The position numbers and the translations under genes are program-made. Of a stretch of DNA of 64,000 nt, positions 30,735 to 57,076 are shown one piece after another. The notes beneath the pieces are model-generated. The model ran no database searches and was not told the origin of the DNA. It saw nothing but the letters and a program-made list of their open reading frames with translations. The DNA lies in IMG/VR virus record IMGVR_UViG_3300035698_022190, positions 146,209-210,208 of that record; one strand, given 5' to 3'. Within the stretch, counting starts at the first letter, position 1, and the number at the start of each line of letters is the position of its first letter.

Positions 30735-30944
30735 ATGACTAAAGCACAGAAAATATTTTTTAAGTATGCCCAAACAGCACCTTTAAAAACCATAATTAAG
30801 GCAACTACAAAAGTTGTACAAAAAGGTGTAGGGACTGTTCCCCCAAAAGGAATTAAGAGTGTTGGTTTTAAAGGAAAACACTTGCCCAATAAAAATGCTT
30901 TTGAAGGGGCAGATAAAATTGGAAAAGGCGCTCCACGCCCCTAA
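30735..30944 (+). CDS. Small basic protein with FFKYA leader
   Basis: Leaderless start; K-x-A leader. Confidence 0.6.
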   Translation: MTKAQKIFFKYAQTAPLKTIIKATTKVVQKGVGTVPPKGIKSVGFKGKHLPNKNAFEGADKIGKGAPRP

Positions 30945-30946
30945 GT

Positions 30947-32302
30947 ATGTCGTCTAAAGCCAAAGGCATTCCCGATAGATCTAAGTATCTACAAATGCCG
31001 GTTACTAAGAATAATGAGTGGCTTGGCAATATTCAGTCCCACAAGGCAAACAAGGCAGGGCAACATTTTGATTTACGTATAAATGATCCAAAAACTTCGC
31101 ATGCATATTCTTGAGCACTTCGTAGTTTACCAGAACCTGGACAAAAGGTATTAGCCGTTGAACAGCCCACTCATACAAAATCTTATATGGGGTGGTCTGG
31201 TATAATAGAATCCGGCTACGGGGCAGGGACAGTAGAAAGTACTTTTCATGATAAAATAGAAGTGCTAGAATCTGGCACAGATAGAGTCACCTTTAATATG
31301 TATGGACCGGGACAAAAAGTACATCGTTATATGCTTATGCGGATGGATAACAAAGATTGGCTACTTTATAACTATACTGCTACAACAGACACACCATTAA
31401 TACCAAAACATAAACGTTCTTATAAAGAAATATCATATGATAAAGTTGAAACTAATAGAGATAATGAGTGGATGGCGCCCAAGATGGACGGTGCCCACAA
31501 TACAGTTCTTCTTAGACCTGAAAAACGCATTGACGTATATTCTCATAGGCTAAGTAAAAAAGGCTCAGAAAGAATTGATCATTCATATAGAACAGATTTA
31601 TATAAAACGAAAAGTCCTAAGGAATTAGGAGTAACGGTAGTTCGTTCTGAATTATATTTACCAAAACAAGATAGTTCTATAGTAGGAAGTTTGTTGACTC
31701 CTACTGTTTGGAAATCAAGACTAAAGCAAAGAACTCTTGGTAAATTACAAAATGTTATTTTTGATGTGGATCGTTATAAAGGACAAGACATGACTGACGC
31801 GCCATACAGTGAAAAATGGCGAATATTGCAAAAAATTAATAAACTTATTCCTGCGCTACATTTACCCGAACTGGCTAAAACTCCAGAGCAAAAAAAAGCT
31901 ATGTTAAGATCGGTTCGTGATAATACCCATTCAGAAACAGGCGAAGGTATTGTTATTTATAAACTTAACAAATCTATTCCTATCAAAGCAAAAGCTGTAA
32001 GTGACTACGATGTAAAAATAACCGGAACTTATCCAGCACTTCCTGGATCAAAATATGATGGAAAAGCTGTTGGAGGTTTCACGGCTACCCCAGAGTATGA
32101 CAGCAATGTTGAGATTAGAGTGGGTACTGGCTTAAAAGATGTAGAACGAATGGAAGTTTATAAGCATCCTGAAAAATATATAGGCCAATGGGCTAAAGTC
32201 CAGGGACTAAAAAAAACGAAATCGGGCAAGATTAGAATGCCCGTATATAAAGGACTTCGTTTTGAAAAATATCTTGGCAAATTTTTTAACCAAAAAACAT
32301 AA
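30947..32302 (+). CDS. LigD-type 3'-phosphoesterase fused to ATP-dependent DNA ligase (1 TGA=Trp)
   Basis: HFDLR..YS*A..LP.PG..LAVEQPTH; KMDG adenylation motif, EGIV, OB domain VGTG; TGA at 31112. Confidence 0.85.
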
Positions 32303-32754
32303 TGGAAAACATAGCAAACTACTTTTATTCTGAAATGCTTGCAAATATGATATCACAAGCACGATATACTGTTAAAAGCTTAAAAAAACAGAACTATTTA
32401 TATTCCCCATCTTCGGCGGCGTGGGAGTATCAAACTATTCACTTTGGAGGGATGCGCGGATCTGGCCATAACACAGCTATGGAAGCCTTGTCCCATGTTT
32501 TTAAATGTGAAATTGTTTGCGCAATCGCCGCACATACCAAGCTTTTTCCTGAGGCAAAAAAAGGTACGTCAATTACTTGGCTTGACCATGTGCTACAGCC
32601 GGGAACTCATAGACATAAATTTGAAGTAGTGTTTCTAGATAACTGGGCCACCATGATGTTACAGGCATACCCAGATGTGGAAAGCATGATTCACCAACTA
32701 GAGCCCATATATAGAGCATACACAAATAGCACTATTTTTGTATTAATACACTAG
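32302..32754 (+). CDS. Hypothetical protein with degenerate P-loop
   Basis: GGMRGSGHNT, VVFLD. Confidence 0.55.
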   Translation: MENIANYFYSEMLANMISQARYTVKSLKKQNYLYSPSSAAWEYQTIHFGGMRGSGHNTAMEALSHVFKCEIVCAIAAHTKLFPEAKKGTSITWLDHVLQPGTHRHKFEVVFLDNWATMMLQAYPDVESMIHQLEPIYRAYTNSTIFVLIH

Positions 32755-32773
32755 AGGATGAAATAAAAAATAT

Positions 32774-34936
32774 ATGAGTTTTAATTTAAATAAAGTTGAG
32801 TATAAAGACCATTTAAAAGGGTTTTGAGCGGGCAATTTAATAGCTAATTGGAAAGCGTTGCCGAGCGAGTTCAAGAAATTTGAGCCACCATTTTTTACCA
32901 CAAAGGATGATATACTGTTTCCCTATAACTGGCAAGTGAACTGGAAAGCTGACGACGACAATGATATTGAGTATATGTATTTACACTTAATGAATAAACA
33001 TAAAACATTGCAGCTGTCAGCAAATCAAATTCGAGATGGATGATTAGAACATATAAACGATGATTATTTGTGGGTTGCCAATCAGCGTGCTTATGATTTA
33101 ATGAAAACAGGCATGGTTCCCCCAAGCACAGGAATGGCGTGTAATAATGAGTTTTCTGACAAGATTGATGCCCAAATAGAGTGTGAAATCTTTGGTGTAT
33201 TTTATCCCGATGAGCCACACAAGGCATTAAATATAGCAGATTTGCCAATTAGAACAGTTGGCGAAGGTATTGCTTATCACGCCTCAAGAGTTTATGTGGC
33301 GATGTATTCTTTAGCTTTAAACAGTCAATCGCCATTAGAGTTGTTAGATAAAGCAATCCAATATGGGAATGATAAAACAAGTGAGATTTATAATTCAATA
33401 AGAGTAAGTTTCAAAAATAGTTATACTTGGGAAGAAGCGAGAGATTTCTTTTATGAAGAATATCAAAAGAACAACTCTGACTACGATTGGGCGTTAGATG
33501 CTGAGATTAATTTTGGTGCTGTTCTAATTGCTCTGTTATGGGGTGAAATGGATTACAAAAAGACTGTGATGATTGGTACTCTTGCAGGATGGGATTCAGA
33601 TTGTAATGCAGTTACAGCAGGGTCATTGGTTGGATATGTAAAAGGATTCAAACATCTTGAACAGGTTTTTGGTAGAAAGATTTATACTAATTATAATATA
33701 GCAAGAACTCGTAAGAATATGCCTGATTATTTACCTAATGTAAGTGGCGCTGAAGATACTTTTGAGTTCATGGCAGATAGAATGATTAATTTTATGACAA
33801 TAGATAATGGAGATAAAATGAAAAAAGTAATATTTTGTATTGGAGACAGTAGAACTGCTGCAGGACACAGTCCTTGGTACACACCAGCTCCCGATAGTTA
33901 TCCTTTTTTCTTACAGCAAGAAATGGGGAATGGGTATGATGTTAGACAGTGGGGACAAGGTGGCACTTCTGTAACTAAGGGAGTCCATTGGAGTATCTGG
34001 GATGGTTTTGAAGGTAACCCGGCTTTGTCTTTTCAGCATTTAAAAAATGTTCAGCAAATAGAGAGTTTCTGGGATAAAGCTTTTCCTGGAATGCCTTTTA
34101 ATGAAACTGAGATAATTAACATCGTCAATTATGGTACTAATGATGCGATGAATAATAGATGGCCTACAACTAAAGCGAACTTTAAAAGGGATTACAAAGC
34201 ATTAACTTGGCTACTAAAAGGTAAAACATACCTTTGTTTACCACAGCCAACTTTTGGTACAGGTGAAGACCATGTTTATAACTCGTCAATTTTAGAAGTG
34301 CACGCATTAATAAATGAGCTTTCCAAAGAAACAGGATGCCCCACAATAGACTTTTATACAGGTACAACAGCTAGTATGTCGCCTGTTGATGGGCTACATT
34401 TCGGAGCATTAGGCAATATGCACTTTGCTAATGCAGCAAGTAAAGAATTAAAAAATGACTCACCAATAATACCACCAATAATCGGAGAACCTATGGAAAC
34501 ACCAATAATTAAAATTGAAAATAATAAACTATCCGTAACTAATTTTGATCCAACTGTTACAAATTATAGCTGGCAGTATAGTAAAACATTGCATGGTTAT
34601 GATGAATGGCTTGGTTTTGGAACAGAAATGGACATTAAGCCGAGATTCCAAATAGATGGACATTATTTCTTTTGTTACGCAAGAGATAATACCACTGATG
34701 GTAGAACACCTGATTCTAAGAGGGTGATATATAAATCAGGCGCCCCGGCCCCAATATGCGGATGCACAGATTCGGAAGCAACAAATTATAATCCAAACGC
34801 CACAGAAGATGACGGCACATGCATATACTCTAACCCCACCAATAATGATAAAGTTGTTTTAGAGATGCGAGCACATCTTTTAACTGCTACAAATGCATTA
34901 ACTGCCATTGAAGACTTATTTGATGATATTGAGTAA
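32774..34936 (+). CDS. ADP-ribosylglycohydrolase fused to SGNH/GDSL hydrolase (2 TGA=Trp)
   Basis: GF*AG..IANW, ADDDNDIEY, IRDG*L, GWDSDCN; IGDS, YGTNDA, DGLH; GCTD..A.NYNP.AT.DDG.C repeat. Confidence 0.8.
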
Positions 34937-34949: not shown

Positions 34950-35225
34950 ATGATGAAAAAAATAGCTAATAGATTTGTGCCCTCAAGAGATTTCGTTAAG
35001 CTTTGAAACAGGCGTAGTCGTATTGCAGCACAGCTCACAAAACAGGTAGCTGAAATAGCAACTAAACGAGTAGCACCTGGACCAGAGCCATTGGGAAAAT
35101 TTATGAAAGCAATAAAAGTTCCAAGCCAACGAATCACAAAAGTTGATCAAGATATTTCTAAAGTCCAGTCAATAATAAATAAAAAAAGATATTCAAAATT
35201 ATACAAACAGTATCATGGAGCTTAA
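34950..35225 (+). CDS. Small basic protein with KKIA leader (1 TGA=Trp)
   Basis: AGGAG RBS; open to TAA under TGA read-through. Confidence 0.6.
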
Positions 35226-35598: not shown

Positions 35599-36096
35599 AT
35601 GTTAAATCCTGCGACTGATAAGACACAACCTTCCGAATATACGAAGGCCCTCAAACTAAAAAATAAACTTGATATTGCTATACGCAATAAAGAGCTCCAA
35701 AACATTTCTCATAATGTTCGAGCAATGGTTGATGGAAAAGAAAGTAACAAATCTTTTGCTAAGAGTGTTAGCAAACATACCGCCACAGGTGCTGTAGTAG
35801 GCGCTGCCGCTGGTGGGGTTGCCTCTGTTCCCCTATCTTTAATATCAAAAGGTTTTAGAGGTTTAAGACATAAGCCCATTGGCATGGCTACAGTGGCTGC
35901 CTCAACTGCAATCGGTGCAGTTGCGCTTGGCGGAAATCGCCTTAGACAGGGAAAACGTCCAATTCAAATTAGACAACACGACGCAGATTTAATGCATTTA
36001 AAAGGCTTAAGACAAGAATTAAAAAACACAGAATCACCTGCTTATACAGCATATGTTAAACATAACAGAAAGTTGAGCAGGACTGTGGATGTTTAA
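35599..36096 (+). CDS. Basic protein with Gly/Ala hydrophobic hairpin (putative virion cargo)
   Basis: TATGAVVGAAAGG; leaderless start. Confidence 0.65.
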   Translation: MLNPATDKTQPSEYTKALKLKNKLDIAIRNKELQNISHNVRAMVDGKESNKSFAKSVSKHTATGAVVGAAAGGVASVPLSLISKGFRGLRHKPIGMATVAASTAIGAVALGGNRLRQGKRPIQIRQHDADLMHLKGLRQELKNTESPAYTAYVKHNRKLSRTVDV

Positions 36097-39200: not shown

Positions 39201-40359
39201 TTTAATTTCTGCAGCAGGCGGCACGGGTGTGGGGACAGCTGCATACTTAGGTAGCAGGTCTATTGACATCTCAAATCACTCAGATGCGACACAGCAGCGT
39301 TTAATTTCTGCTCATAAAAAACGTGGTACAGGCATTGGTTTTAGAAATAAGCCTAGAGCCCTGCTAGCTAAAGTTATATATGAGCCTAAATTTAAGTATT
39401 ATACTTTAAAGTCACAGGTACGGAAAAACCCACCAGGGGTAATGTTTAGTAAATTACTTACTAAAACTGAGGGCGGTATTACTATTAATGGCCCTAAGTT
39501 ATTTAAATCTTATCGCAAAACTTTAAGTAATAAAAAGAATTACCAAAACCTTCCGCATATTGGAAAATATTTTCCGAAAACAATGGAAATGACGGATGCC
39601 TTTGCAGAAGTTGGTATTTCAAATGTATCTAAAACCACCGATAAACAGCTTTTAAAAGGCGTAGCTGATATTGAAAAGAAACACGGTAAGTTCTTTTATA
39701 AACAAAAACCAGACTTTGATAGAAATCTAGGGCACTCAATGCGTGGAGCATACGGCCATAGTGAGGATATACCTAAGGGTGTAAAACGTACAGATATTAC
39801 TCTTTGAGACCGCGTACGAAATAAAGATGTAAGATATAAAAAAGCTCCTGACATATTAAAAACAATTAGAAAAGAAGCCCCTAATGTACTAATCAGCAAT
39901 GATTGGGGAACAGGACACAAAGAATACCGTTTAGAAATTTTGGGAGATAAGCCCACACTTCTACACCGTTTTGGTCGTAAAAAAGGAATGAAGGTTAAGA
40001 TAGACAAAGAATTAAGTGAGTCTGGAAGAGCCGGGTTAAACACATTTATTGGTGACTATAAAAAATATTTAACCAACAAAGGGGCATACAAGCATCTAGA
40101 TGAAGTTCCTTTTGTTGGCGCAGATATAATTATTCCTAAGAAAGGAAGGGTAAAAGGAGTAGAGTTACAATGGAATTCAGGTTTCCCCTTCCATGCTAAG
40201 GCAATGAAACATATGGTATCTAAACCCTATGGATCAACCGGACGCATGGCCGAATATATAACGGGACGTATTTCACATCCAAAGGCATTAGCTATAGGAG
40301 GTACTGCAGCCTTAGCAGTTGGCGGCGGAATCAAAGCGTGGAGAAGACGTAACGATTAA
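39169..40359 (+). CDS. Third ATP-grasp protein (1 TGA=Trp)
   Basis: FPKT, FFYK, KEYRLE, VGADI..VELQ..SG; hydrophobic termini. Confidence 0.7.
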
Positions 40360-41246
40360 TGAAAACTTTAGTTAAATTAGGTTTTGAGGCTGCTAAACCA
40401 CGTACGCGTCTTAGACGTGTCACGGATGTAGGCACAGCGGCCTTTGCTGGGGCCTTAACGTCACTTGTACCCGGAGTCCCTATAGGAACCGGTATAGTAG
40501 CTGGGATAGCTCCTAAGGGCCATAAAACAGAAGTGGCGGCTAAAACAACAGCTGGAGGTATACTTGCCTCAGCACCCGCAGCAATGTATGGTGTGCATAG
40601 GTTAGCTAAAGATGTCAGTAATACTAATAAAGCTGATTATATGCGCTTAATAGATCGCGGACAAGAATTATATAAAGATGTAAAGACCGGGAAAGCAGGT
40701 AAGTGAAAAACGTTAAAGTATATGATGCGTCGAAGTAAAGGGGCAACTAAGAAAATGTATGCAGCCAACATTGCCTTAGGAACAATAGGAACTGGGCTAT
40801 CATATGCTGCAGCAACAAAAAATTATTATAAAAAAGCAGAACTAACTAAGCTTGGTTTCCATCCTGAGTCTTTTACGCAACCATCTCATGAAAAAGATCA
40901 GGCCTTTCTAAATTCTTTTTCGCGTGCGGGGATTAGTGGCAAAACAAGAAAAACTTTAAATAATCCACTGACTTGGGCTTTAGGTGGTATAAGTTTATTT
41001 ATGAATCATAAAAAACGTTCAGATAATCCAGAGTCAATGTGGCCTTATTTAACTGGTGGTTTGTTAGCAGCAATATCAATAAAAAGATGAAGCAACGCAA
41101 GCAAAAGAGAAAAACAAAAATTTGTAAAAGAATATAATGCTACAATGGGCACCACTTTTACTTTAAAGCATCCTAAGATGCAATCACTTTGGAATATGAC
41201 AAATGCCCATGCAAATAGGGTAGACAGGTTTAAAGGTAATGGCTAA
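40359..41246 (+). CDS. Modular basic/hydrophobic protein with KLG/KKA motifs (2 TGA=Trp)
   Basis: Continuous frame to TAA at 41244. Confidence 0.65.
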
Positions 41247-42048
41247 ATTTTTTAAAAAAGCTGAGTATGATCCAACTAAAGTACGTCAGGCCCCTGGCTA
41301 TGATGCCGGAGCTCAATATAAACATAATAGAAACACGCCTACATCACATGCTATTAGACAATTAGGGGCAGAGTGAATTTATAGAAAACCCCCAAAAGGA
41401 GTTTTTAAAGAAAGTAAAATTCCTGTAAATCAGGGATCCCATTTAAAAACAGCCGGGGTATGGGGAAAATTTACTAATGCCTTGTCAGAAGGTTTTAAAG
41501 AAAGCGACGCTGAATTAAAACAAAGTATGAATCATGGTTGAGAGACTTTAAAAGCTCATGGTAGGTATGGTAAGCATTTGAGTAAACATAAATTTTATGT
41601 TTATAAAACGGGTCGAGAGTATGGAACGCCTCGTATTCCTTTATTAAAGCACGACATGTCAAAATTTTTACCAAGTGAATGAGTTCCCTATACTAATTTT
41701 TGAGAAGGCCCTGAGGGAGTTAAAGGTACATCAAAATCTAGAACATTAAAAACTAGATATGGTCTAGCAGCTCCAGCAGTTTACGATCGTTTTCGATCTG
41801 CAGTAGACAAACATTATAGGCGTAATCCGCACCATTATCATAAAATTGGTAGAGAACGAGAACAAGATTTTAACACCAAACTTGAGATGATAGCGGATTG
41901 ATATAGTACAAGTAGGGGCATACACGAGCAAGCCTCAGATAAACCTTTTCCGGGATTTAGAGATTGGTATGGTGGAAGACGAGCGAGTTTAAAGATTGGT
42001 CCTGAAGTCATTGCTTATATTGACAATTATCTTCTCAATTCAAAATAA
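41239..42048 (+). CDS. DUF5662-like HD-type protein absent from the ORF track (5 TGA=Trp)
   Basis: MAKFFKKA leader; HDMSKFLPSE*VPY, HYRRNPHH, EMIAD*. Confidence 0.75.
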
Positions 42049-42099: not shown

Positions 42100-43059
42100 A
42101 TGAAAAAAGAAGCAGGAGTAGCACAAATCGCGTCAACCGCTGTAGGATCTTTAAGTGGTGGGATAGCTGGTGGTGCAATCCAAGATAAAAGATATAGAGA
42201 TTTAAGACGAAAAGGAATTATGGTTCCTCCGGAAAAGCATACGATTAAAATAATGCAAGGTATGTTGGCCGGTGGAATGGTTGGGGCCGGTGTAGGTGCC
42301 GGGGCTGCTTCTAAAGTAACAAAGGTAGTGGCAAAAAAAGTTTCTTTAAAAGCTTTGGCAGATACAGAAGATATGTTTAAAGGATTAAAATTCAAACAGC
42401 GTAAGATTGAAAAAGAAATTTTTAATACAGCTACGAAGCAATTTAGTGGTGTTTTTCCAGAAGTAAAGGATTATAAAATGAGTAAGAGTATTAAAATGAC
42501 TCCAGAAAGGATTATAAAAGATTTTACTTCGACTACTGGCGTTAGCGCAAAAAAAATGGAAAGAGAAATGATGAATGATTTTACTGACCAAACTCTCAGA
42601 CGTATCCAAAAGAATACTGCCTTATTTAGTAAGGGAGACAGAAAAAGGTCATTCAAAGCAGCACTAAAACATCAACGAATAGAAGACATAGACAATTCTA
42701 ATATGTTGACACACATTCAGGGAAGATCAAAAAAGATTTTTGGATTTGATAAAGTTGGTCAAATTACAGAAGACCAAATAATAGAGCTAATGGCTAAAAC
42801 TGCCGCACGTTATGGAGATCAAAAGTTTAAATCACAAGTACGGGAGGTTCCAGTTTCTAAACGTATTAGTAGAGCAGCGAAAACAGTTGGGATACCATCA
42901 GCAGTAGGAACAGCTGTTCTAAATACAGCCACACTTGGCAGACATTCAATAAAATGGGGTCTTGGGGTAGGTGCAGTAGCGACTGCTTTTACCGCAGCAG
43001 TAACATCGAAGAACCAACGTGTTTTTGTTCCAGTAAATGAAAAAAAGGATTTAAAATAA
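42100..43059 (+). CDS. Modular putative virion protein (KEAG/KVG/KTAA motifs, Gly-zipper segments)
   Basis: GAGG RBS; K-x-A/G motifs separate modules. Confidence 0.65.
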   Translation: MKKEAGVAQIASTAVGSLSGGIAGGAIQDKRYRDLRRKGIMVPPEKHTIKIMQGMLAGGMVGAGVGAGAASKVTKVVAKKVSLKALADTEDMFKGLKFKQRKIEKEIFNTATKQFSGVFPEVKDYKMSKSIKMTPERIIKDFTSTTGVSAKKMEREMMNDFTDQTLRRIQKNTALFSKGDRKRSFKAALKHQRIEDIDNSNMLTHIQGRSKKIFGFDKVGQITEDQIIELMAKTAARYGDQKFKSQVREVPVSKRISRAAKTVGIPSAVGTAVLNTATLGRHSIKWGLGVGAVATAFTAAVTSKNQRVFVPVNEKKDLK

Positions 43060-43466
43060 TGAATAAACATGTACAACAAGGATTTACCGCTGCACTTATA
43101 AAAGAGGCAGTAGATACAGTGAATATTTTAGAAAAAGAAGCCCAGAAAAAAAGTAAGGGTGTTGCATCAAGTGCAGCAACGGGCGCAGCAGCTATAGGAA
43201 TTCCTGCAGCAGCAATTATGGCAGGAATAGCTTTTAAAACTAGAAAGGGCATTTTACAAAAAAGTATGAAAGGCTTACAAAACATACGTAAACATACAGC
43301 TCATGGTGGTAAACTACGGGCAACACAAATGGCTGAAAGGTCAACTGCAAAAGCCTTAAAGAGCGAAACTAAAGCACAAGCGTTAGCACTTACAGCTAAA
43401 GCCGGATTAGCTGGTATTGGCGTAGGTGGGGCTGGTGGAGCAGCAATAGGAGCTATAAAAAAATAA
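43059..43466 (+). CDS. Ala/Gly-rich putative virion protein
   Basis: GFTAALIKEA and LEKEA motifs. Confidence 0.65.
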   Translation: MNKHVQQGFTAALIKEAVDTVNILEKEAQKKSKGVASSAATGAAAIGIPAAAIMAGIAFKTRKGILQKSMKGLQNIRKHTAHGGKLRATQMAERSTAKALKSETKAQALALTAKAGLAGIGVGGAGGAAIGAIKK

Positions 43467-45108: not shown

Positions 45109-45927
45109 ATGCAGCTTCCCTATATTAAATATTTAGAGACATTGGTAGCTGGTAGACTATCTCCTAGCGCCATACACGATAAACTTCTGCAGGTAAATTT
45201 AAATCTTCCTTTGCCCGCAGTTCAGGTAGTATATACCACCCTATCAGCCCAAAAACCAGAATATTTTACTGATAAAACTATGCCCCCAGATATGGACTGG
45301 CTTATTGATTTAGAAATTGATAAGATGTATGGCTATATGTTTAAGGTCAATGTTCCTACTGGAATACTTGGCGTTAGTGGGGCTTTTAATGTGGTGGACG
45401 ACCCACTTATGTATCGCCTTATTACATCCTTAGCGATGGCACGAATTACCAACGAAGATATAGAATTAATAGTAAACGGTAAGTATAATATATCATATGC
45501 GGCCGAAGATATACAAGAATTTTTACATTACTTTTTTAATGTAAAAGACTGAGATCTTTCTGAGAAAAAAGAGTATGTGGAAACTATACAGGACAAACAA
45601 TTAAAAAGCTCGTACAAACTTGCCCTCAAGGGTGATAAAGATTATTTAGTTTGAAAGCTAGGAGCAGCGCCGGAAAAAAGTTTCACTAGTATGTTACGAG
45701 ACATGATGACAGATTCATATTTTAATTTCAAAGAACGGTCACGAATTGAGCCAGAGTTAGCTCAAAAATGGGGTACTCTTGCAATTCGTTTAACAGATCG
45801 TTTAGAAAAATTAGAGAAAGAGACAGAAGAAAAGAAAAATCTTTTTGATGATGTCCGCTTTAAAATACAAGAAATGACGGGAGAAGAGGACAAAAAACGA
45901 CATTTATCGGAGATAGAAAATGAGTAA
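45109..45927 (+). CDS. Helical protein, candidate small terminase (2 TGA=Trp)
   Basis: Joins two track ORFs; upstream of TerL; C-terminal coiled coil. Confidence 0.5.
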
Positions 45928-46177
45928 GTTTTTTAAAACAGCAGTTTCAATTGAATTGGTAGATCGTGCTGGTGTAGCAGCTGTAAGAAAAAGTAAAGCG
46001 GTTAAAACTTTAGTGAAGAAGAAAAAATATTTAGATCAAGCTTGAAGGTTTGAAGATGTTGTTAGACAAAAGCAATATAAAGCTTTTGAGAAGACCCATA
46101 ATGTAAAGCCAGGTCAGTACCATATGTCTTATCAGGGCAAAGCATGAAAAGCCTTAACAGGATCTTCAATAGCATAA
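45920..46177 (+). CDS. Small basic protein with FFKTA leader (2 TGA=Trp)
   Basis: Fills the gap to 46179 only with read-through. Confidence 0.6.
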
Positions 46178-46178
46178 A

Positions 46179-46976
46179 ATGTTCAATTTTTCTAAAATAG
46201 CAGGTTTATTAGATAAACCACAAAACCAACTGGCAGTGGATGTTTGGGATTCTAAGAAAAAACTTATACCACAACTAAAAGAGCATATACTTACAGAACT
46301 ATTCAAAATTTTACCAAAAAAGATAGTTAAGGCTGTTTATATTATTGGATCTATAACTGGATGGAAATACACCGATACCTCCGATATCGACATAAATGTA
46401 CACATCGACCCATTCGACGAAACAATGGATAAACAAAAATTAACCGGAGCAGTAAATGGTTTCTTGGGACTGGGTGGACGCCATCCTGTCAATTTCTTTG
46501 TGCAGCCATACAGAGAAGATACAGACTGGCAGGATGCTATGTTCGGTGTTTATGAAGCCCTAACAGACAAATGGATTAATGAGCCACCACAACGCTCAAC
46601 GGTTCGAGACCCAAAAAAACAGTTTGATGACGAAATAATTATGGCTAAAGCTGAAGCCAGAAGATTTGAAAGAAAAATTATAAAAGTTAAAAACGATTAT
46701 AAAAAGCTAAAAAACGTTTGTGTTTGTCCAGCACGTAGCTGGGAAATGGTATATTACCGTAGACAGCTCAAGCGTAACCTAATAAGAGATTTTCGTGATC
46801 TAGTGCGATTTGTAGATCGTGTAGAAAAAAACCGGAAAATGGTATATAGTGTTGGTTGGGGAGTGCCCCGACGCAATTACTATAATATAGTATTTAAATA
46901 TATTGAACATGGACCTAACGGAGATTTCTTCAAAAAACTACAACCACTCAATGTTGATGAAAAATTCATCCTATAA
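46179..46976 (+). CDS. Pol-beta-superfamily nucleotidyltransferase with FSKIA leader
   Basis: IIGSITG..TSDIDINV; HPVNFF. Confidence 0.75.
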   Translation: MFNFSKIAGLLDKPQNQLAVDVWDSKKKLIPQLKEHILTELFKILPKKIVKAVYIIGSITGWKYTDTSDIDINVHIDPFDETMDKQKLTGAVNGFLGLGGRHPVNFFVQPYREDTDWQDAMFGVYEALTDKWINEPPQRSTVRDPKKQFDDEIIMAKAEARRFERKIIKVKNDYKKLKNVCVCPARSWEMVYYRRQLKRNLIRDFRDLVRFVDRVEKNRKMVYSVGWGVPRRNYYNIVFKYIEHGPNGDFFKKLQPLNVDEKFIL

Positions 46977-49946: not shown

Positions 49947-50975
49947 ATGTTTACTGCACACGATTTGGACAGTCTGGGCAAAAAACTTTCTCAAGATTAT
50001 ACCGAACATAAGATCGAATTAACAGACAATTTGGCAAAGACGGCTACGGCACAAGGATTAAATCAATATCAGACGAGCCGTGTCGCAGAAGCAGCCAATG
50101 TTGAATCTTATTTAGTATTAATGAAGACGGCAGAAGATAAATATATCGACTTCCCCTTAGCAAATGCTAAAAAAGCTTTCGAACTCAGTCAGGGTCTTGA
50201 AAAAGAAGCCTCATCTGTCGTTTCCAACGATTATCAAAGACCTCTTGTTGAGGTTACTATACCAGAAGTATTCAACAAATTTGCAAGCTTAGAGGGGATA
50301 GAACGATCAGAAGATCAGGCAATTCCTAAAAGTGAAAGTGAATGACGTAAAGAAGCTTCTGATTATAAGGGCACTGTCCAGTTTTTAAAAGATGCCTTAT
50401 ATGAAGCTAGTGCCTCCTTTGAAACAAATTATTTAGATTTAAAGTATCACACAAAACAAGCTATGCTCCAAAATACATCGTTTGCAGATATAAAAAACAT
50501 TGTTTGTGTTGCATCCAATCCAATAGGCGAGCCTCTAAGTGACCAAATTCACACTGATTTGAAAGATGATTTAAAATTTCATGATTTCGAAAAAGAAGCT
50601 GAACACCACACATCTCCAAACCCAGAGTCCAAAATTTTTAAGAGTGCTTTAAAAACAGCCGAAAGTATTAAACGACACGAAGATATAGCGAATGCCATAG
50701 AGCATTACATCAATAAATATGAAACTCTCACGAAAGAAGCTGGTTTCAAAATACCTCAGATTATAAAAAGAGACCCTATTACCAGGACCGGTAAAGCCTT
50801 AAAAGGTTTTCTCAATTTTCCAGCCAATCATCCTATAGGTGCTGTAGCATTACCGGGAATGGTTGGAACTTACTTCTATGGAAAATCAAAAGGTAAAAAA
50901 GAACAGGGCGCTTTCTTAGCACAGGGCTATGCAAAATTAGGTCCTACAAAAAATCAACAAAAAATATTTAGGTAG
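49947..50975 (+). CDS. Head assembly/internal protein with K-x-A motifs (1 TGA=Trp)
   Basis: RVAEAAN; KTAT, KEAS, KEAG; one frame across TGA at 50343. Confidence 0.7.
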
Positions 50976-51470: not shown

Positions 51471-54371
51471 ATGATTGAAAAAACCCTAAATTATATTTAC
51501 GGTGATAATGACACGGAAGTCTTCTCTGTTATGGATAATAACATGGAGAAGCGCGCGTCGTACTCATCAGAGGTTCAAGACTATCTTGATAAGTTAGCTG
51601 AGTCTCCCGATAAGACGTATGCGCTCGTAAACGCATTGTCAGCAGGTGAATATTATGGGTCTAATCGTAATGGTGACTACTTCCCCGAAAAGGCACTAAA
51701 AGATTATCACAAAACATTTGAAGCTTTAGGGCATGTATATACCCACCATGTAAATAAAGATCCAAAGAAATCCTTAGGTTCAGTAAAATTTGCTCATTAT
51801 AATCCAACTATGAAAAGGGTTGAACTGGTTCTAGAATTAGATAATGCTAAAGCTAAGCCAGTTATTGAGCGCCTTGATAAAGGGGAACTGCCAGCAGTCA
51901 GTATGGGTTGCTTTCAAGCTGGTGTAAATATTATACTTAGCGATTTTTCAAAAAAACCCATTGAGGATATTCAAGTTGGCGACGAAGTACTAACACATAC
52001 AGGGGAAATACATAAAGTAACTGAATTGCATCCAAGAGATTATGCGGGAATAATGTATACTATTAATCCTGTGGGTAAATATAGGCCTTCAATTACGGCG
52101 ACCAAAGAGCATCCGTGGCTTGTAATTGAGCCAGACAAGTTTTTTGAAAAAGACGAAAAAGCTCGATTAAGACGAAGAAAAAAACTTTCGTTAGCTGACG
52201 CTGTATGAAAAGTATCTGAAGATTTATCTACACAAGACCACCTTTTAATTCCAAAACCTAAGAACGCGGACGTGATTGACATGCCTGTAGCAAAGGCTAA
52301 GCTTTTAGGGTGGTATTTAGCAGAAGGCCACACACATATTAAAGATAATGGAGTTGAATTTACGGTAAACAGGGCAGACCAAATAGTTAAAGATATAGAC
52401 TCTGTTTTAAAAACCTTAGGCTTACCAGAAACAGTAGTTATGGCACATAATGTTTCTAAAGAAGCTTTACGGCTAATAGTTTTCTCTGCAGATTTAAAAA
52501 AAGATGTTTTATATTATTGTGGAAAGTATAGTCATAAAAAAAGATTACATAGAAAAGTTTTTTATTGGAGTGATGAAGCTAAATTAGCATTTCTAGGTGC
52601 GTATATTTCTGGAGATGGTTTTTTTCACGAAAATCAAGCATATATTAGTTCTTGTAATCGTGAACTTTTAGAACAAATTCAGTGGCTTGGTTTTTCTTTA
52701 GGAATAAACTCAACACTTGGAAAAAATGAACACAAAGCAGGAAATGGTTTTTCTTTTGAAGATACAACAGAGTATATTTTAAGGTTTAGAGGAACACATA
52801 ATAGTATACTATCTAAGTATGCTGAAAAAATTTCAACTGTAAATAAGCAAGCAGTTGGTGGCAAAGGTGGACCTTTTGAATATGAAAATTTTTATCTTTT
52901 AGCCATTGAAGAAATAAAAGGAAATGAATATACAGGTCCTGTATATAATTTTGAAGTAGATGTAGATAATTCTTATGTGGTAGAACAATATGCAGTACAT
53001 AACTGTAGAGTTCCAAAAGATACATGTAGTATATGTGGAAACGAAGCAACAAAAATCGCAAATTATTGCGAACATTTAAAAAACAACATGAACAAAGTAA
53101 TGCCAAATGGTAAAAAGGTTTATGCTATAAATAACCAACCGAAGTTTTTTGACATTAGTGTAGTAACAATCCCAGCCGAAAAGACAGCTAGTTTTATTAA
53201 AAGAATATCTAGTAAAATTAAAGCATCTTTTGCCAAATCAGCAAATGAAATAGATGTCCCATTAACGTGGGCGCAAAGCATTGCAAAAACAGCATCGCTG
53301 GAAACACAAGCAGATATTAAAAAGAAAATAGACGTAAAATTAGATGCGGTTTCTGAAGACCCAAAGAAGTTAATCTTACTGTCACAAAAAAGGTTATCTA
53401 AAGAAACTATTGAAAAGCTATCTGAACATCCATTGGGCGAAGTATTGTCCACTTTAATTGGTTTACGAATAGTACCCGTTAAAGAAGATTTTCAAAAATT
53501 AGCTTTATATAGTATGGGGAAAGCAGAGGGTGCGGAAGAGTTAGCTGAAGCAAAAGTATGTTTTGAAGTTAATCCTAAATTACGTCCTATAATACCTGCA
53601 GACGTTTCTCTTGATTATTTTAATGAAAAAATTGCCGGGTTGTTAATAGAGGATTTGCCTGGAATGGCTTTAACAAAGCCTAATATAATCTCACGCAGCT
53701 TTTATAAAGCAGCACAAGTGGGATTTACAGAGCCAATCGCTACATCGGAGGAATTAAATCAGGCTTTTCCTGAAAAATCCAAACGTGAACGGAGCATGAT
53801 TAGCAAAGTTTTCTTTGGCCAACAAGAAGATCCAAAACTTAATTCTGTTAAAAGCCCAATAATTCCTTTAGGAGTATTGGGTAGTCTATATTACGGGTAT
53901 ATAAAAACATTTAACAATGTTAATACAGGAGAGTTTAAGAAGTTTTTAGCGCGACATCCATGAGTATTTACAGCTATGTTAGGTACCGCAGCCGGTGCGT
54001 CTATATTAGCTCAGAAGCGCGCTCACGGAATACATGCTTTAGATAAGCAGGCAGGATTAGTAGAGAATGCGGGACACGTGATAGGTGGTTTACTTATTAC
54101 AGTTCCAGGTTCTTATTATGCTGCTTCGTTCCCAGAACAAAAAGCACAGCAGGGGATTCCAATCTCATCTAGTCAGAATTTTTTGAGAAAACATCCCGCA
54201 CTTGTTGCTTTAGGCGCGTCCATTCTTGGCGTAACCGGAATTGGAACAGTGACTAAACAAATGAATAAATTAAAAACTTTGAATTCTAACTGACTTAAGT
54301 TTGCCAGCGTTCTAAATCGTTTAGACGAGGAAGCTTTAAATGTTATTTATAAGGATTTAATCATAAACTAA
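51471..54371 (+). CDS. Prohead maturation protease with intein and long C-terminal extension (3 TGA=Trp)
   Basis: NRNGDYFP, HHVN.D, VSMG|C, CSICG, FFDISVV.IPA; upstream of scaffold and capsid. Confidence 0.75.
51909..53003 (+). mobile_element. Intein with LAGLIDADG endonuclease in the prohead protease
   Basis: SMG|CFQAG..PIEDIQVGD.VLTH..T.EHP; LGWYLAEG, LGAYISGDG; VYNFEV..SYVV...VHN|C. Confidence 0.9.
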
Positions 54372-54386
54372 CGGAGGTATTACACA

Positions 54387-54965
54387 ATGCAAAAAGGTGT
54401 AAACATCGATCAAATTTTACTTGAGCTAGAGCAAGAGAAGAAAGCTGAAGATATCTTTAATGATTCCCTTCTAGAAGAGAAAAAGCCAGAAGAAGTTAAA
54501 GTAGAAGTTGAAAAAGAAGTAGAAAAAGAAGCTGAAAAAGAAGTAGAAGCTGAAGTTAAAGTAGAAGCTGAAGTTGAAAAAGAAGTAGAAGCTGAAGTTG
54601 AAAAAGAAGTAGAAGCTGAAGTTAAAGTAGAAGCTGAAGTTGAAAAAGAAGCTGAATTAACTGAAGAAGAAGCTGAAGTAAAAGCTAATCTTGAAAAACA
54701 AGGTCGTTATATGGCAAAGGGATTCTTAGCAGAATTAAATGAAGCCGCTAGTGATACTGTAGAAAAGGTTGCTGAAGAAGCTGAAAAAGAAGTAGAAAAA
54801 GAAGCTGAAAAAGAAGTAGAAGCTGAAGTAGAAGCTGAAGTAGAAGCTGAAGTTGAAAAAGAAGCTGAAGTAACCGAAGAAGAAGAAAAATGGGCAGCAT
54901 TAAGACCAGACCAACGCATTGTTCTGGGTTTATATGACCAATTTTTTCCAACGGAGGAAGAATAA
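54387..54965 (+). CDS. Acidic scaffolding protein with EKEA/EVEA repeats
   Basis: Low-complexity Glu-rich; G..MA.GF motif; position before capsid. Confidence 0.7.
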   Translation: MQKGVNIDQILLELEQEKKAEDIFNDSLLEEKKPEEVKVEVEKEVEKEAEKEVEAEVKVEAEVEKEVEAEVEKEVEAEVKVEAEVEKEAELTEEEAEVKANLEKQGRYMAKGFLAELNEAASDTVEKVAEEAEKEVEKEAEKEVEAEVEAEVEAEVEKEAEVTEEEEKWAALRPDQRIVLGLYDQFFPTEEE

Positions 54966-54968
54966 ATA

Positions 54969-55313
54969 ATGGCTAATCTATTAGAAATATATGATGACAT
55001 GGTTCAAGTTGAGCAAGAACAAGAAGCAGACGTTATCGAAAAAAACGCCGAGGCACAACTAACAACGGATCGCGTAGAAGTATTAGCAAAATATGCTACA
55101 CTTGCAGATAATATGTTAGGTGAAGAATACGGCGATGATTATAAAGAAGAAGATGTTCAAGAGTTAGCTAGCTATTTAATTGAAAATGACTCGGCTATTG
55201 AAGAACAACAAGAAAAAGTTGCTGAATATGTTCAGTTAGGAACAATCATGGCTAAAGCTTTTAAGAAAGAATTAGAAGCAGAAGCCGAAGTAGTAACAGA
55301 GGAAGAAAAATAA
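54969..55313 (+). CDS. Acidic scaffold/core protein
   Basis: EKVA..G.IMAKAF motif shared with the previous gene. Confidence 0.65.
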   Translation: MANLLEIYDDMVQVEQEQEADVIEKNAEAQLTTDRVEVLAKYATLADNMLGEEYGDDYKEEDVQELASYLIENDSAIEEQQEKVAEYVQLGTIMAKAFKKELEAEAEVVTEEEK

Positions 55314-55329
55314 CTCTTCTTTAATTATA

Positions 55330-55689
55330 ATGAGTGAACAAAGTTTAGAAAAACGAGCTGCTCTTGCTATTAGAGCTTTACAAACAGATTTGCAAGAAAG
55401 TGAACTAAGACAGCAAGAGCAGACCGCTCAGCTAGAGCACCAAAAACGTGCTCAAAAGCTGGCTACGTATTTTTTAAAAATTGGCCACATAACATTAGAA
55501 AAATTTGAGGACACAGTTGCGGACTTTTGCGAGCAACCCTCAGAACAATTAGATGTGATTGAAAAAGCAGCGGCTATGACGGAAAATGGAAATGGATCTT
55601 TTTTAGGCAAAGTTGCCGAAGATGTCGCATCTATATCACTGTCTCCAGAGGATCGCTTTATACAAAGAGCGTTGCTGGATGACGATTAA
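55330..55689 (+). CDS. Coiled-coil scaffold-like protein
   Basis: EKRA and EKAA motifs; position. Confidence 0.65.
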   Translation: MSEQSLEKRAALAIRALQTDLQESELRQQEQTAQLEHQKRAQKLATYFLKIGHITLEKFEDTVADFCEQPSEQLDVIEKAAAMTENGNGSFLGKVAEDVASISLSPEDRFIQRALLDDD

Positions 55690-55719
55690 TAGTAATAACA
55701 TTACTGGAGGAAAGTAATA

Positions 55720-56163
55720 ATGCTTAGAATGTTAACAAACTTGAATTTGGTACACCGTTTTGACGTAACAGCCGCAGCCGGCTTGTTGGCGTCAGGTTAT
55801 ACCGGAACATGGGTTGGTGGAAATACCACGACATTGGACTATATTGCCTCAGCAGGCGATTGGGCAATGGGTGTTGTATGGAACGAATCTAATCGTGACG
55901 GTACTGCGGGATTCACACCAGATACAAGAGCAGTAGCATCAGGTGGAACAGGTAAATTAACCGCTGTATACGGAAAATTCCGTGCACTAACAGATCAGTT
56001 TACAGGGACCCCCGCAGTTGGAGCCGCATTATATGCAGGCACTGACGGTACATTAAGTACCACATCAGGCAGCGGTATAATCGTTGCTTATTGTACAAAA
56101 GCAAGTCATTCAATTACTCACTTACTAACCGCCCATACTGTGATCGAATACGTTACAGTTTAA
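55720..56163 (+). CDS. Capsid decoration/cement protein
   Basis: Gly/Thr-rich, VG..LY...DG.L; immediately before the major capsid gene. Confidence 0.6.
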   Translation: MLRMLTNLNLVHRFDVTAAAGLLASGYTGTWVGGNTTTLDYIASAGDWAMGVVWNESNRDGTAGFTPDTRAVASGGTGKLTAVYGKFRALTDQFTGTPAVGAALYAGTDGTLSTTSGSGIIVAYCTKASHSITHLLTAHTVIEYVTV

Positions 56164-56179
56164 TAGGAGAAAAATAATA

Positions 56180-57076
56180 ATGGAAAACTTATCAGCAAGT
56201 ACTGTTAATGAGCTATTCATCCAGAAATTAGATTCTCCGGATGGATTAGAAAAAGTAGCAATGGAAGGATCTGCCTTTATTAGACAAAAGTTACGTGAAG
56301 TATCTTTTGCAAGAAAGGTTATTCAACCTCAGTATGTAACAAAAGCCGATTTAACGCGTTCAGTTAATCACGATGGTCTTGTAAAGATTGTTGATATTGA
56401 ACCTGATTCAAAAGCTATGACCGTTAACTTCCGTGGTGAACCCGACTGGAACTATATTGAAGGACCTCGTTATGAGATTCCTTTCTTTATGATCAGTTCA
56501 GAGGATTTCCAAAAAACCGAAGAAGAACTATTAGCTTACGAAATGCCTCTAACCGAGGTTATTGAAAAGAACTCAGTATTAGATATTCAAAAAATCGAAG
56601 ACACCTCGTTTTTAGCCCAAGTAGATGCAGCTGTTGAAACAGAAGCCAGCCAACTAGCGGAAGCTTATGGCACAGGTGGAATTATCAACAAAGAGGATTT
56701 CAAAGCTCTATTTGATGTGTTAGATGGTAATGAGTTACGTACCGAAATTATCTTAATGGATACAAAAATGTTTAATCGTCTGTTTTTATATGACGCTACA
56801 ACAGTCGGCGACGGCGTTGGATCAGAAACCCATGTAAATGGTTATTCTTATTCAACATTGTTCGGTCGTAGACTAATTGTATCTAATAAAGTTAGTTTAC
56901 TTGACAATAAAATCTACGGCTTCACAGCCCAAGAATTTATGGGTCAATTCTTAGTATTGAATGATGTAAAATTCTGGATCGAAAAGAAAAAGAATATTAT
57001 CTCATTTGCAGCCTATGAAAGTGTAGGTATGGGAATTGGTAATACCAAGTCCTGTGCTAGACTAACCTTAAGTTAG
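56180..57076 (+). CDS. Major capsid protein (HK97 fold)
   Basis: IRQKLRE.SFARK, IQK.ED..F, YE.VG..IGN; strong RBS; terminator follows. Confidence 0.8.
   Translation: MENLSASTVNELFIQKLDSPDGLEKVAMEGSAFIRQKLREVSFARKVIQPQYVTKADLTRSVNHDGLVKIVDIEPDSKAMTVNFRGEPDWNYIEGPRYEIPFFMISSEDFQKTEEELLAYEMPLTEVIEKNSVLDIQKIEDTSFLAQVDAAVETEASQLAEAYGTGGIINKEDFKALFDVLDGNELRTEIILMDTKMFNRLFLYDATTVGDGVGSETHVNGYSYSTLFGRRLIVSNKVSLLDNKIYGFTAQEFMGQFLVLNDVKFWIEKKKNIISFAAYESVGMGIGNTKSCARLTLS

What the first reader, a model, noticed from the sequence alone, without database searches (positions are those of the whole stretch)
30735..57076. Recurrent K-x-A/G motif: candidate protease site and capsid-targeting leader for a cargo library
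Seen: unrelated late proteins begin with short leaders ending in K-x-A/G (IFFKYA, MMKKIA, LVKLG, KFFKKA, MKKEAG, LIKEA, KFFKTA, FSKIA). The same motif separates modules inside polyproteins and saturates scaffolds (EKEA), the protease, the capsid N-terminus (LEKVA) and the 11210 protein. Known: T4 and phiKZ prohead proteases remove propeptides from internal head proteins. Inference: a portable tag loads diverse enzymes (ATP-grasp, HD, nucleotidyltransferase) and membrane-active peptides into the head for injection.
Basis: partly seen in the sequence, partly recalled or inferred. Interest (0 to 1): 0.75.

Follow-up and report, generated by a model that had tools for sequence, protein, structure and literature searches.

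The report
Shared head-protease motif and cargo leader
A 210-kb phage and its relatives put one short N-terminal tag, ending in the motif hydrophobic-x-Lys-x-Ala, on many unrelated proteins and repeat that motif through their head-assembly proteins. This looks like a new cleavage and loading code for a T4/herpesvirus-type capsid protease, but no cleavage or packaging has been shown.

Summary
Several only appear once TGA is read as Trp, which this phage does in its late genes.

The literal motif K-x-A/G is no commoner than composition predicts (z -0.7). The real signal is longer: hydrophobic-x-K-x-A/G.
- It is enriched in plus-strand proteins (98 vs 58 expected) and not in minus-strand ones.
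- It is concentrated in seven proteins (47 vs 7.4 expected): the proteins at 49947 and 11210, the protease, three scaffolds, and one protein outside the window.
- The same orthologues are dense in three related genomes and in cultured Salmonella phage Arash. P5, P3 and P1 are the conserved positions.

Seven unrelated proteins begin with a leader containing F-x-K-x-A (five with M-x-K-F-F-K-x-A). Relatives carry a 12-residue version (MDKAxYVFEKLA) on 8-12 clustered genes and inside polyproteins.

The neighbouring protease models as the T4 gp21/herpes assemblin fold (Z 10), and conserved motif copies flank it in disordered linkers.

Best reading: a prohead-protease site with P1 Ala that also serves as a T4-CTS-like cargo leader. 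Cleavage and packaging are inferred, not shown. The ATP-grasp and HD labels were not confirmed.

The parts
30735..30770 (+). Long-form leader MTKAQKIFFKYA at the start of a 69-aa Lys/Gly-rich protein (30735-30944)
   Evidence: Same form as MDKAQHVFMKYA in relative G003.
34950..34967 (+). Weak leader MMKKIA of a 91-aa protein (34950-35225; contains one TGA)
40359..40382 (+). Leader MKTLVKLG of a 295-aa Gly/Ala-rich hydrophobic protein (40359-41246)
40824..40856 (+). Internal tandem copy YYKKA-E-LTKLG inside the 40359 protein; candidate module boundary
   Evidence: Same arrangement as LNKKA-EAV-MSKLG inside the G003 polyprotein.
41239..41262 (+). Leader MAKFFKKA of a 269-aa DUF5662-like protein (41239-42048; five TGA)
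   Evidence: Pfam DUF5662 scores 52.6 bits on the G003 homologue.
42100..42114 (+). Weak leader MKKEA of a 319-aa Gly/Ala-rich hydrophobic protein (42100-43059)
43095..43142 (+). LIKEA and LEKEA near the N-terminus of a 135-aa Gly/Ala-rich protein (43059-43466)
45920..45943 (+). Leader MSKFFKTA of an 85-aa basic protein (45920-46177; two TGA)
46179..46202 (+). Leader MFNFSKIA of a 265-aa Pol-beta-like nucleotidyltransferase (46179-46976)
   Evidence: K-x-A-G-[IL]-L-D is kept in G002 and G003. Pfam Polbeta scores 23 bits, below the 26.9 cut-off.
49947..50975 (+). 342-aa protein between terminase and protease with 9 motif sites (8 Ala-type vs 1.1 expected); candidate core or scaffold substrate
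   Evidence: Sites such as NLAKTA are conserved in 100% of 26 homologues.
51471..54371 (+). Prohead protease of gp21/assemblin fold with a long C-terminal extension; interrupted by an intein (51909-53003); 10 motif sites
51543..51557 (+). MEKRA at residues 25-29, ending the protease's disordered N-terminal segment (candidate N-terminal self-cleavage site)
   Evidence: K28 and A30 are nearly invariant in alignment A1. Residues 1-29 have pLDDT below 50.
53280..53294 (+). IAKTA in the linker after the protease domain (candidate release site, as in herpes UL26)
   Evidence: K241 is nearly invariant within a variable, disordered linker.
54387..54965 (+). Glu/Lys/Val/Ala-rich scaffold-like protein with 6 sites (VEKEA x4, VEKVA, LEKQG)
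   Evidence: 5 Ala-type sites vs 0.7 expected.
54969..55313 (+). Acidic scaffold-like protein with IEKNA and LAKYA
   Evidence: LAKYA is kept in 98% of 42 homologues.
55330..55689 (+). 119-aa head protein with 4 sites, including N-terminal MSEQSLEKRA
   Evidence: 3 Ala-type sites vs 0.23 expected; LEKRA kept in 93%.
56246..56260 (+). LEKVA at residues 23-27 of the major capsid protein (56180-57076); cleavage here is uncertain
   Evidence: K-x-A is kept in 93% of 46 homologues, and Arash has LVKEA. The site lies inside predicted helix 20-41.
11210..13390 (+). 726-aa protein next to the tail-spike genes with 14 sites (10 Ala-type vs 1.7 expected); function unknown
   Evidence: Orthologues in G001-G003 carry 13-16 sites. 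P3 Lys identity is 0.74 against 0.36 overall.
13401..13433 (+). N-terminal MSEYTVYSKSA of a 97-aa protein immediately after the 11210 gene

Best explanation
The motif hydrophobic(P5)-x-Lys(P3)-x-Ala/Gly(P1) is most likely the recognition and cleavage site of this clade's prohead serine protease (window 51471-54371), which has the T4 gp21/herpes assemblin fold.

Inferred steps:
1. The protease trims itself at a site before its catalytic domain and at one in the linker after it.
2. It chops the scaffold or core proteins (49947, 54387, 54969, 55330, probably 11210 and genome 66503) into pieces of about 30-50 residues.
3. It cuts Gly/Ala-rich hydrophobic polyproteins into modules.

A short N-terminal leader that ends in this site works like the T4 capsid-targeting sequence. 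The leader is M-x-K-F-F-K-x-A in this genome and M-D-K-A-x-Y-V-F-E-K-L-A in relatives. It would bring otherwise unrelated proteins into the assembling core and then be removed there. Those proteins include an SNF2-type helicase, an HExxH protein, a DUF5662 protein, a nucleotidyltransferase-like protein and small basic or hydrophobic proteins.

Shown here: the motif, its enrichment, its conservation pattern, the portability of the leader, and the protease fold.
Inferred: cleavage itself, the scissile bond being after Ala, and loading into the head and ejection.
For: Enrichment and specificity:
- Phi-x-K-x-A is 98 vs 57.7 in plus-strand proteins and not enriched in minus-strand proteins.
- It is 47 vs 7.4 in seven proteins, while the reverse order, swapped positions, Arg for Lys, and Glu/Ser/Leu for Ala are all at expectation.
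- Logo: P5 L/I/V/F, P4 Glu, P3 Lys, P1 Ala 87%, P1' Glu/Ala/Ser.

Conservation:
- The same orthologues are dense in G001-G003.
- P3 Lys identity is 0.74-0.89 against 0.36-0.42 overall. P5 stays hydrophobic in 0.79-0.96 of cases. P4, P2 and P1' are at or below average.
- K-x-A is the top conserved gapped pair in head-protein alignments (8 vs 2.6 expected) and zero in tail and neck proteins.
- In cultured phage Arash (capsid protein 34% identical), head proteins gp220, gp222, gp223 and gp225 carry 10, 6, 8 and 6 sites against 0.6-1.8 expected. Its tail proteins carry none above expectation.

Protease:
- An intein-less homologue models with VIA-align Z 10.0 to T4 gp21 (5jbl) and Z 5.6-8.6 to herpes assemblins, above unrelated folds at about Z 5.5.
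- Conserved motif copies end its disordered N-terminus and sit in the disordered linker after the domain.

Leader:
- It sits at residues 1-8 of six late ORFs plus one long form.
- G002 has at least 8 and G003 at least 12 genes with the 12-residue leader in a roughly 10-kb block upstream of the terminase.
- Codons vary synonymously, so conservation is at the protein level.
- The mature parts are unrelated except for one pair.
- Internal copies occur without start codons, and in-frame between a DUF5662 domain and an HExxH module.
- The leader's DNA pattern occurs in only 22 IMG/VR stretches; most of the identifiable contigs are ones that also carry this capsid protein.
- The Arash helicase gp217 begins where the leader ends, and was detected in virions together with the RNA polymerase subunits.
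Against: - There is no proteomic or biochemical evidence for cleavage or packaging in this phage or any relative.
- Pfam, PHROGs and PDB sequence searches do not place the protease in a named family. The assignment rests on a model with mean pLDDT 64.
- The capsid site LEKVA lies inside a confidently predicted helix within a wholly conserved N-terminus.
- The fused RNA polymerase, the most likely virion enzyme, has no leader.
- The 11210 protein sits beside tail-spike genes, not head genes.
- The seven 'dense' proteins were picked using the motif itself, which inflates z 15. The unbiased figure is z 5.6.
- The Arash virion list holds 116 of 272 proteins, so it is a noisy witness.
- Other proteases are encoded nearby: a papain C1 peptidase at 28795 and an HExxH protein.
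Confidence: 0.55

Rival explanations
1. The motif is a docking motif that is not cleaved. It would be a short helical element through which scaffold proteins, the capsid protein's N-arm and tagged cargo bind one another or a common receptor during head assembly. The leader would stay on the mature proteins, much like an encapsulin cargo-loading peptide.
For: The capsid copy lies within predicted helix 20-41 of a fully conserved N-terminus. The scaffolds are helical-looking Glu/Lys/Ala repeats. No cleavage has been observed.
Against: The conserved positions are P5, P3 and P1 only, with a free P1', as expected for non-prime-side protease recognition. Copies sit in disordered linkers at both ends of the protease domain. 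Copies also sit at module boundaries of polyproteins. Leaders are always at the extreme N-terminus, which suits removal.
Confidence: 0.2
2. The site is cleaved, but by a different enzyme: the papain-family peptidase at 28795-29601, the leader-bearing HExxH protein, or a host protease. This would resemble host Prp trimming the capsid and scaffold proteins of staphylococcal phage 80alpha.
For: Pfam Peptidase_C1 scores 65 bits at 28795. There is an HEFGH motif in genome ORF 89465.
Against: The motif tracks the head module and flanks the gp21-fold protease itself in every relative examined, including Arash. P3/P1-type specificity is the known pattern of this fold family (PMC5694885, PMC4498786).
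Confidence: 0.1
3. The leader serves something other than head loading, for example a translation-initiation or mRNA element, a membrane-targeting amphipathic helix, or a recombination joint for swapping gene cassettes.
For: The leaders sit at gene starts in a tightly packed, variable gene block. Many tagged proteins have hydrophobic Gly/Ala-rich segments.
Against: Codons vary synonymously while the residues are kept. Copies occur internally without start codons. The same core motif is enriched in scaffolds and the protease.
Confidence: 0.08
4. Nothing is there: K-x-A/G is a three-residue pattern that Lys- and Ala-rich proteins produce by chance.
For: The literal K-x-[AG] motif is at expectation on both strands.
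Against: See the extended-motif statistics, the controls, the cross-genome positional conservation and the 12-residue leader. The leader's 24-specified-base DNA pattern has 22 hits in IMG/VR, mostly in contigs that also carry this capsid protein.
Confidence: 0.02

Closest known systems
T4 capsid-targeting sequence (CTS) and gp21 prohead protease
   Same: A short N-terminal leader is shared by unrelated internal head proteins and ends in the protease's own site. The same site is scattered through scaffold or core proteins, which are cut to small pieces. The protease fold matches T4 gp21 (Z 10). T4 leaders are 10-20 residues (PMC5694885).
   Different: There is no sequence similarity to the T4 CTS. 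The inferred site is Phi-x-K-x-A with P1 Ala, not [LI]-x-E. The Glu-type motifs of T4, phiKZ and SPN3US are not enriched here. The protease carries a roughly 350-residue C-terminal extension and an intein. The tagged set is a large, variable gene block that includes a helicase.
Herpesvirus assemblin (UL26): protease-scaffold fusion with release and maturation sites
   Same: Same fold (Z 5.6-8.6). The protease domain is followed by a conserved site in a linker and then a long C-terminal part. P1 is Ala, as in PrV YLQA-T and VQA-S (PMC4498786).
   Different: Here P3 is Lys and P5 is hydrophobic. There are many more sites, and there are N-terminal cargo leaders. The scaffold role of the C-terminal extension is untested.
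phiKZ / SPN3US giant-phage head maturation (gp175 / gp245)
   Same: Jumbo phage; many head and ejection proteins carry propeptides with repeated protease motifs; virion RNA polymerase; the protease processes itself (PMC10052503, PMC5694885).
   Different: Their motif is [SAG]-x-E or A-x-E and most propeptides are over 100 residues. Here the leaders are 8-12 residues. The capsid protein is a minimal 298-aa HK97-type protein with separate scaffolds.
Encapsulin cargo-loading peptides
   Same: A portable short peptide directs diverse enzymes into an HK97-fold shell.
   Different: Encapsulin peptides are mostly C-terminal and are not cleaved. Here the tag is N-terminal and shares its core with sites that flank a protease.

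Membership tests
gp21/assemblin-fold prohead serine proteases | Assemblin/gp21 three-dimensional fold | tested here: met
   The model of intein-less homologue L009:6371-7150 gives VIA-align Z 10.0, rmsd 2.8 A over 129 residues to 5jbl. The next 30 or so matches are all herpes proteases. Unrelated folds score about Z 5.5.
gp21/assemblin-fold prohead serine proteases | Conserved catalytic Ser and His residues | tested here: inconclusive
   Ser145 (VSMG), His81 and His94 are invariant in alignment A1. Their superposition on the catalytic residues of gp21 was not checked residue by residue.
gp21/assemblin-fold prohead serine proteases | Sequence-profile match to a curated protease family | tested here: not met
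   No Pfam hit at E<=1 and no PDB sequence hit. Only a weak PHROG 'head maturation protease' hit, E 0.0012.
gp21/assemblin-fold prohead serine proteases | Gene placed between terminase and scaffold/capsid genes | tested here: met
   The order is TerL 47215, 49947, 50985, protease 51471, scaffolds 54387-55689, capsid protein 56180.
T4/phiKZ-type specificity (cleavage after Glu) | [LI]-x-E or [SAG]-x-E sites enriched in substrates | tested here: not met
   [LI]xE is 42 vs 39.8 and [SAG]xE is 45 vs 55 in the same proteins.
T4-type capsid-targeting sequence | Short N-terminal leader shared by otherwise unrelated proteins | tested here: met
   Seven proteins in this genome, at least 8 in G002 and at least 12 in G003. 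The mature parts are unrelated except for one pair.
T4-type capsid-targeting sequence | Leader ends in the motif that also marks scaffold, protease and capsid proteins | tested here: met
   The leaders' last five residues fit the P5-P1 logo derived from the head proteins.
T4-type capsid-targeting sequence | Leader is removed by the prohead protease inside the head | not testable with these tools
   This needs virion N-terminomics or an in vitro cleavage assay.
T4-type capsid-targeting sequence | Leader is sufficient to load a foreign protein into proheads | not testable with these tools
   This needs a reporter-fusion experiment.
Herpes UL26-like protease-scaffold fusion | N-terminal protease, release site, C-terminal assembly domain | tested here: inconclusive
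   The architecture and a conserved linker site are present. A scaffold function for the C-terminal roughly 350 residues was not tested.
Encapsulin cargo-loading peptide | Uncleaved, usually C-terminal peptide that binds the shell interior | tested here: not met
   The tag is N-terminal, and its core also flanks the protease domain and polyprotein modules.

The most novel reading that the evidence does not exclude
A widespread, almost entirely uncultured clade of roughly 200-kb phages, several of them with TGA read as Trp, would use a gp21/assemblin-fold protease-scaffold fusion with a herpes-like P1-Ala specificity (Phi-x-K-x-A). A natural 8-12-residue tag would define a fast-evolving 10-kb 'cargo library' of enzymes and membrane-active modules that are packed into the head and ejected into the host. 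Because Salmonella phage Arash shares the motif, the code could be tested directly and might be reused as a protein-packaging tag.
Probability: 0.4. Interest if true: 0.75.

Novelty: new variant of a known kind. Interest (0 to 1): 0.62.

Why it matters
The phage proteases of this fold whose sites are reported in the papers read here (T4, phiKZ, 201phi2-1, SPN3US) all cut after Glu. A clade that cuts after Ala, with Lys at P3, would widen the known specificities of the family. It would also bring phage enzymes closer to herpesvirus assemblins, in both specificity and the protease-scaffold fusion architecture.

The leader gives a sequence-only way to list the likely internal or ejected proteins of an uncultured jumbo-phage clade. 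If it works like the T4 CTS, it is also a compact natural tag for loading foreign proteins into capsids.

The signal only appears once the late genes are read with TGA as Trp, so standard annotation would miss it.

Tried and rejected
- Literal K-x-[AG] enrichment: none. [LI]xE and [SAG]xE: not enriched.
- Pfam and PDB sequence searches of the intein-less protease found nothing. Pfam on the window's own protease found only the intein.
- PHROGs and Pfam found nothing for 11210, 49947, 50985, 42100, the 36549 pieces or the 39169 pieces. The 'ATP-grasp' label could therefore not be confirmed.
- The ESM Atlas search of 11210 was uninformative (stored model pLDDT 0.36).
- BLASTP of 11210 against Arash gp218 showed no similarity.
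- BLAST found no G001-G003 homologues for 36549, 39169, 35599, 42100 or 43059.
- Full-text searches for the leader strings gave only unrelated papers.
- The Arash supplement holds a feature table only, with no peptide-level data. I did not test whether motif-bearing Arash proteins are virion-enriched, because 116 of 272 proteins were detected.
- The bS21 phage paper (PMC9723584) describes a different gene arrangement.
It was rerun without that row.
- The portal gene was not looked for.


Full report
**Context and gene models.** The window is the last 64 kb of a 210,208-bp phage genome. Under the standard code, the plus-strand genes from about 30.7 kb onward look fragmented. Every in-frame stop inside the terminase and the 36.5-39.2 kb gene is TGA. 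Across the genome, 48 of 89 plus-strand ORFs of at least 100 aa carry 155 in-frame TGA codons. The 117 minus-strand ORFs need no read-through, and 12 of them end in TGA. TGA positions align mostly to Trp (54) or to TGA (38) in relatives. A tRNA with anticodon UCA lies at genome 65786-65883. I therefore read late genes with TGA as Trp.

- [FILMVY]-x-K-x-A is 98 vs 57.7 (z 5.6) in plus-strand proteins and 40 vs 46 in minus-strand proteins.
- F-x-K-x-A within the first 14 residues occurs in 7 of 116 plus-strand proteins against 0.2 expected, and in none of 164 minus-strand proteins.

**Where the motif is concentrated.** Tested protein by protein, the excess lies in a few proteins:
- window 49947 (8 vs 1.1 expected)
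- the protease at 51471 (10 vs 2.5)
- scaffold-like proteins at 54387 (5 vs 0.7) and 55330 (3 vs 0.23), and more weakly 54969 (2 vs 0.34, p 0.04)
- window 11210 (10 vs 1.7)
- genome 66503-67585 (9 vs 1.1)

In these seven proteins together the motif is 47 vs 7.4. The reverse order, swapped positions, Arg for Lys, and Glu, Ser or Leu for Ala are all at expectation. So are T4-type [LI]xE and phiKZ-type [SAG]xE. These proteins were chosen using the motif, so the unbiased figure is z 5.6. The logo is P5 L/I/V/F, P4 often Glu, P3 Lys, P2 free, P1 Ala (87%) or Gly, and P1' Glu/Ala/Ser.

**The leader.** Outside the window, four consecutive late genes just downstream of a 2019-aa fused RNA polymerase beta-beta' gene begin MSKFFKEA, MSKFFKIA, MGKFFKTA and MPLFFNTA. 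Inside the window are MAKFFKKA, MSKFFKTA, MTKAQKIFFKYA and MFNFSKIA. I fetched three complete relatives whose capsid proteins are 65-80% identical. In G002 and G003 the leader is a 12-residue consensus, M-D-K-A-x-Y-[IV]-F-E-K-[LYI]-A. It heads at least 8 and at least 12 genes respectively. Most of them sit in one roughly 10-kb block upstream of the nucleotidyltransferase and terminase genes. G001 has both the long and the short forms.

Several results bear on what the leader is:
- The codons differ synonymously (GAT/GAC, AAA/AAG, all four Ala codons, TTA/CTA/CTG), so selection acts on the peptide.
- The mature parts of the G003 proteins are unrelated apart from one pair.
- The SNF2-type helicase carries a leader in all four genomes.
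- In G002 and G003 a leader lies in-frame between a DUF5662 domain and a downstream module. In G001 and in this genome the DUF5662 protein has its own N-terminal leader.
- A 679-aa Gly/Ala-rich protein of G003 holds three internal leader-like copies. Two were examined at the DNA level; one has no start codon near it and the other has a Met 12 residues upstream.
- The 40359 protein in the window repeats the same tandem form, YYKKA-E-LTKLG.
- The leader's DNA pattern occurs in 22 IMG/VR stretches. Most of the identifiable contigs also carry this capsid protein.

**Conservation.** The same orthologues are motif-dense in G001-G003. In four-genome alignments of the 11210 and 66503 proteins:
- P3 Lys is 0.74-0.89 identical, against 0.44-0.54 for all Lys and 0.36-0.42 overall.
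- P1 Ala is 0.52-0.78 identical, against 0.34-0.49 for all Ala.
- P5 stays hydrophobic in 0.79-0.96 of cases.
- P4, P2 and P1' are at or below average.

In alignments of up to 46 IMG/VR homologues, K-x-A is the most frequent conserved gapped pair in head proteins (8 sites, 2.6 expected, next best 3). It is absent from four tail, neck and other proteins.

The motif also reaches the cultured Salmonella phage Arash, whose capsid protein is 34% identical. Its head-module proteins gp220, gp222, gp223 and gp225 have 10, 6, 8 and 6 sites against 0.6-1.8 expected. Its capsid protein has LVKEA at the equivalent place. Its tail proteins are at expectation.

**The protease.** The 51471-54371 gene is split by an intein after VSMG-C (Hint and LAGLIDADG domains). 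Many relatives lack the intein or carry one at a second site. Sequence searches with an intein-less homologue gave no Pfam or PDB hit. An AlphaFold model built from 12 homologues (mean pLDDT 64, core 70-90) matches T4 gp21 best (Foldseek rank 1; VIA-align Z 10.0). Herpesvirus proteases follow at Z 5.6-8.6, and unrelated MCE domains score about Z 5.5. Ser145, His81 and His94 are invariant. The first 29 residues are disordered and end in a nearly invariant K28-x-A30 (MEKRA in the window). A second nearly invariant K-x-A lies in the variable, disordered linker after the domain (IAKTA in the window). About 350 further residues follow it. This is the layout of herpes UL26: protease, release site, scaffold part, with Ala at P1 (PMC4498786). 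T4, phiKZ, 201phi2-1 and SPN3US proteases all cut after Glu (PMC5694885, PMC10052503).

**What the tagged proteins are.** Confirmed by family searches:
- SNF2/Helicase_C helicase (PHROG DNA helicase, E 4e-36)
- DUF5662, on the G003 homologue of the 41239 protein

Weaker or sequence-only:
- Pol-beta nucleotidyltransferase, below Pfam's cut-off
- an HEFGH motif with hydrophobic segments in genome ORF 89465

Not confirmed:
- ATP-grasp. There were no hits, and the 36549 protein has no N-terminal motif.
- 'HD'.
- That the Gly/Ala-rich segments are membrane-active. This is a guess from sequence.

In Arash, virion mass spectrometry found the RNA polymerase subunits and helicase gp217, and gp217 starts exactly where the leader ends here. 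That list holds 116 of 272 proteins, so it is weak support.

**Weak points.**
- Nothing shows cleavage or packaging.
- The capsid site sits inside predicted helix 20-41 of an N-terminus that is conserved throughout, so capsid trimming is doubtful.
- The fused RNA polymerase has no leader.
- The 11210 gene follows a gp5/VgrG-like gene and a spike-tip gene rather than head genes.
- Other peptidases are encoded nearby.
- A non-cleaved docking motif would explain much of the same pattern. I rate it lower because of the P5/P3/P1-only conservation, the linker positions around the protease, and the polyprotein boundaries.

**Verdict.** The evidence best fits a prohead-protease recognition site with a specificity new for phage gp21-type enzymes, reused as the end of a portable T4-CTS-like leader. 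It is a new variant of a known kind of system, and it can be tested in Arash.

Noticed in passing
window 30947-63009 (+) and genome-wide; tRNA at genome 65786-65883: TGA is read as Trp in plus-strand late genes (155 in-frame TGA in 48 ORFs), while minus-strand genes have none and 12 of them end in TGA. A 98-nt tRNA with anticodon UCA is encoded. TGA aligns to Trp (54) or TGA (38) in relatives.
   Followed up: partly
window 47641-48756 and 51909-53003: There are inteins with LAGLIDADG homing-endonuclease domains in the large terminase and in the prohead protease (inserted after VSMG-C). Relatives have no intein, the same one, or one at a second site a few residues downstream.
   Followed up: partly
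window 46903-47211 (+): A ribosomal protein bS21 homologue (Pfam 29.6 bits) lies immediately upstream of, and on the same strand as, the terminase.
   Followed up: partly
genome 67939-68925 and 68926-69537 (locus L128:3939-5534); G003 locus L103:12976-13317: A Volactin-type actin homologue (Pfam 238 bits) is followed by a protein with a mitochondrial-carrier repeat (40 bits). A leader-bearing 114-aa protein of relative G003 also has a Mito_carr repeat (54 bits). This is an unusual family for a phage.
   Followed up: no
genome 83406-89465 (locus L069:406-6465): A single 2019-aa polypeptide fuses RNA polymerase beta-like and beta'-like parts (NADFDGDT motif). It lies directly upstream of the leader-bearing HExxH, helicase and two unknown genes.
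   Followed up: partly
window 28795-29601, 30277-30633, 32774-34936: The late block opens with a papain-family C1 peptidase (65 bits), an Hsp20 (45 bits), and a fusion of ADP-ribosylglycohydrolase with a GDSL lipase/esterase.
   Followed up: no
window 8522-11114 (+): A gp5/VgrG-like protein (Atlas lead, score 0.95) and a contractile-injection spike-tip protein (Pfam 68.7 bits) form a plus-strand island inside the minus-strand region. They lie just before the motif-dense 11210 gene.
   Followed up: partly
window 2349-2414 (-): Rfam finds a tRNA (41.6 bits) that ARAGORN does not call. It lies in a GC-richer stretch (2-4 kb) without clear ORFs.
   Followed up: no
window 35599-43466 (+): A run of proteins carries repeated Gly/Ala-rich hydrophobic segments flanked by basic residues. 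They have no detectable homologues in the three related genomes. Similar segments occur in Arash gp4, the second most abundant virion protein by spectral count.
   Followed up: partly
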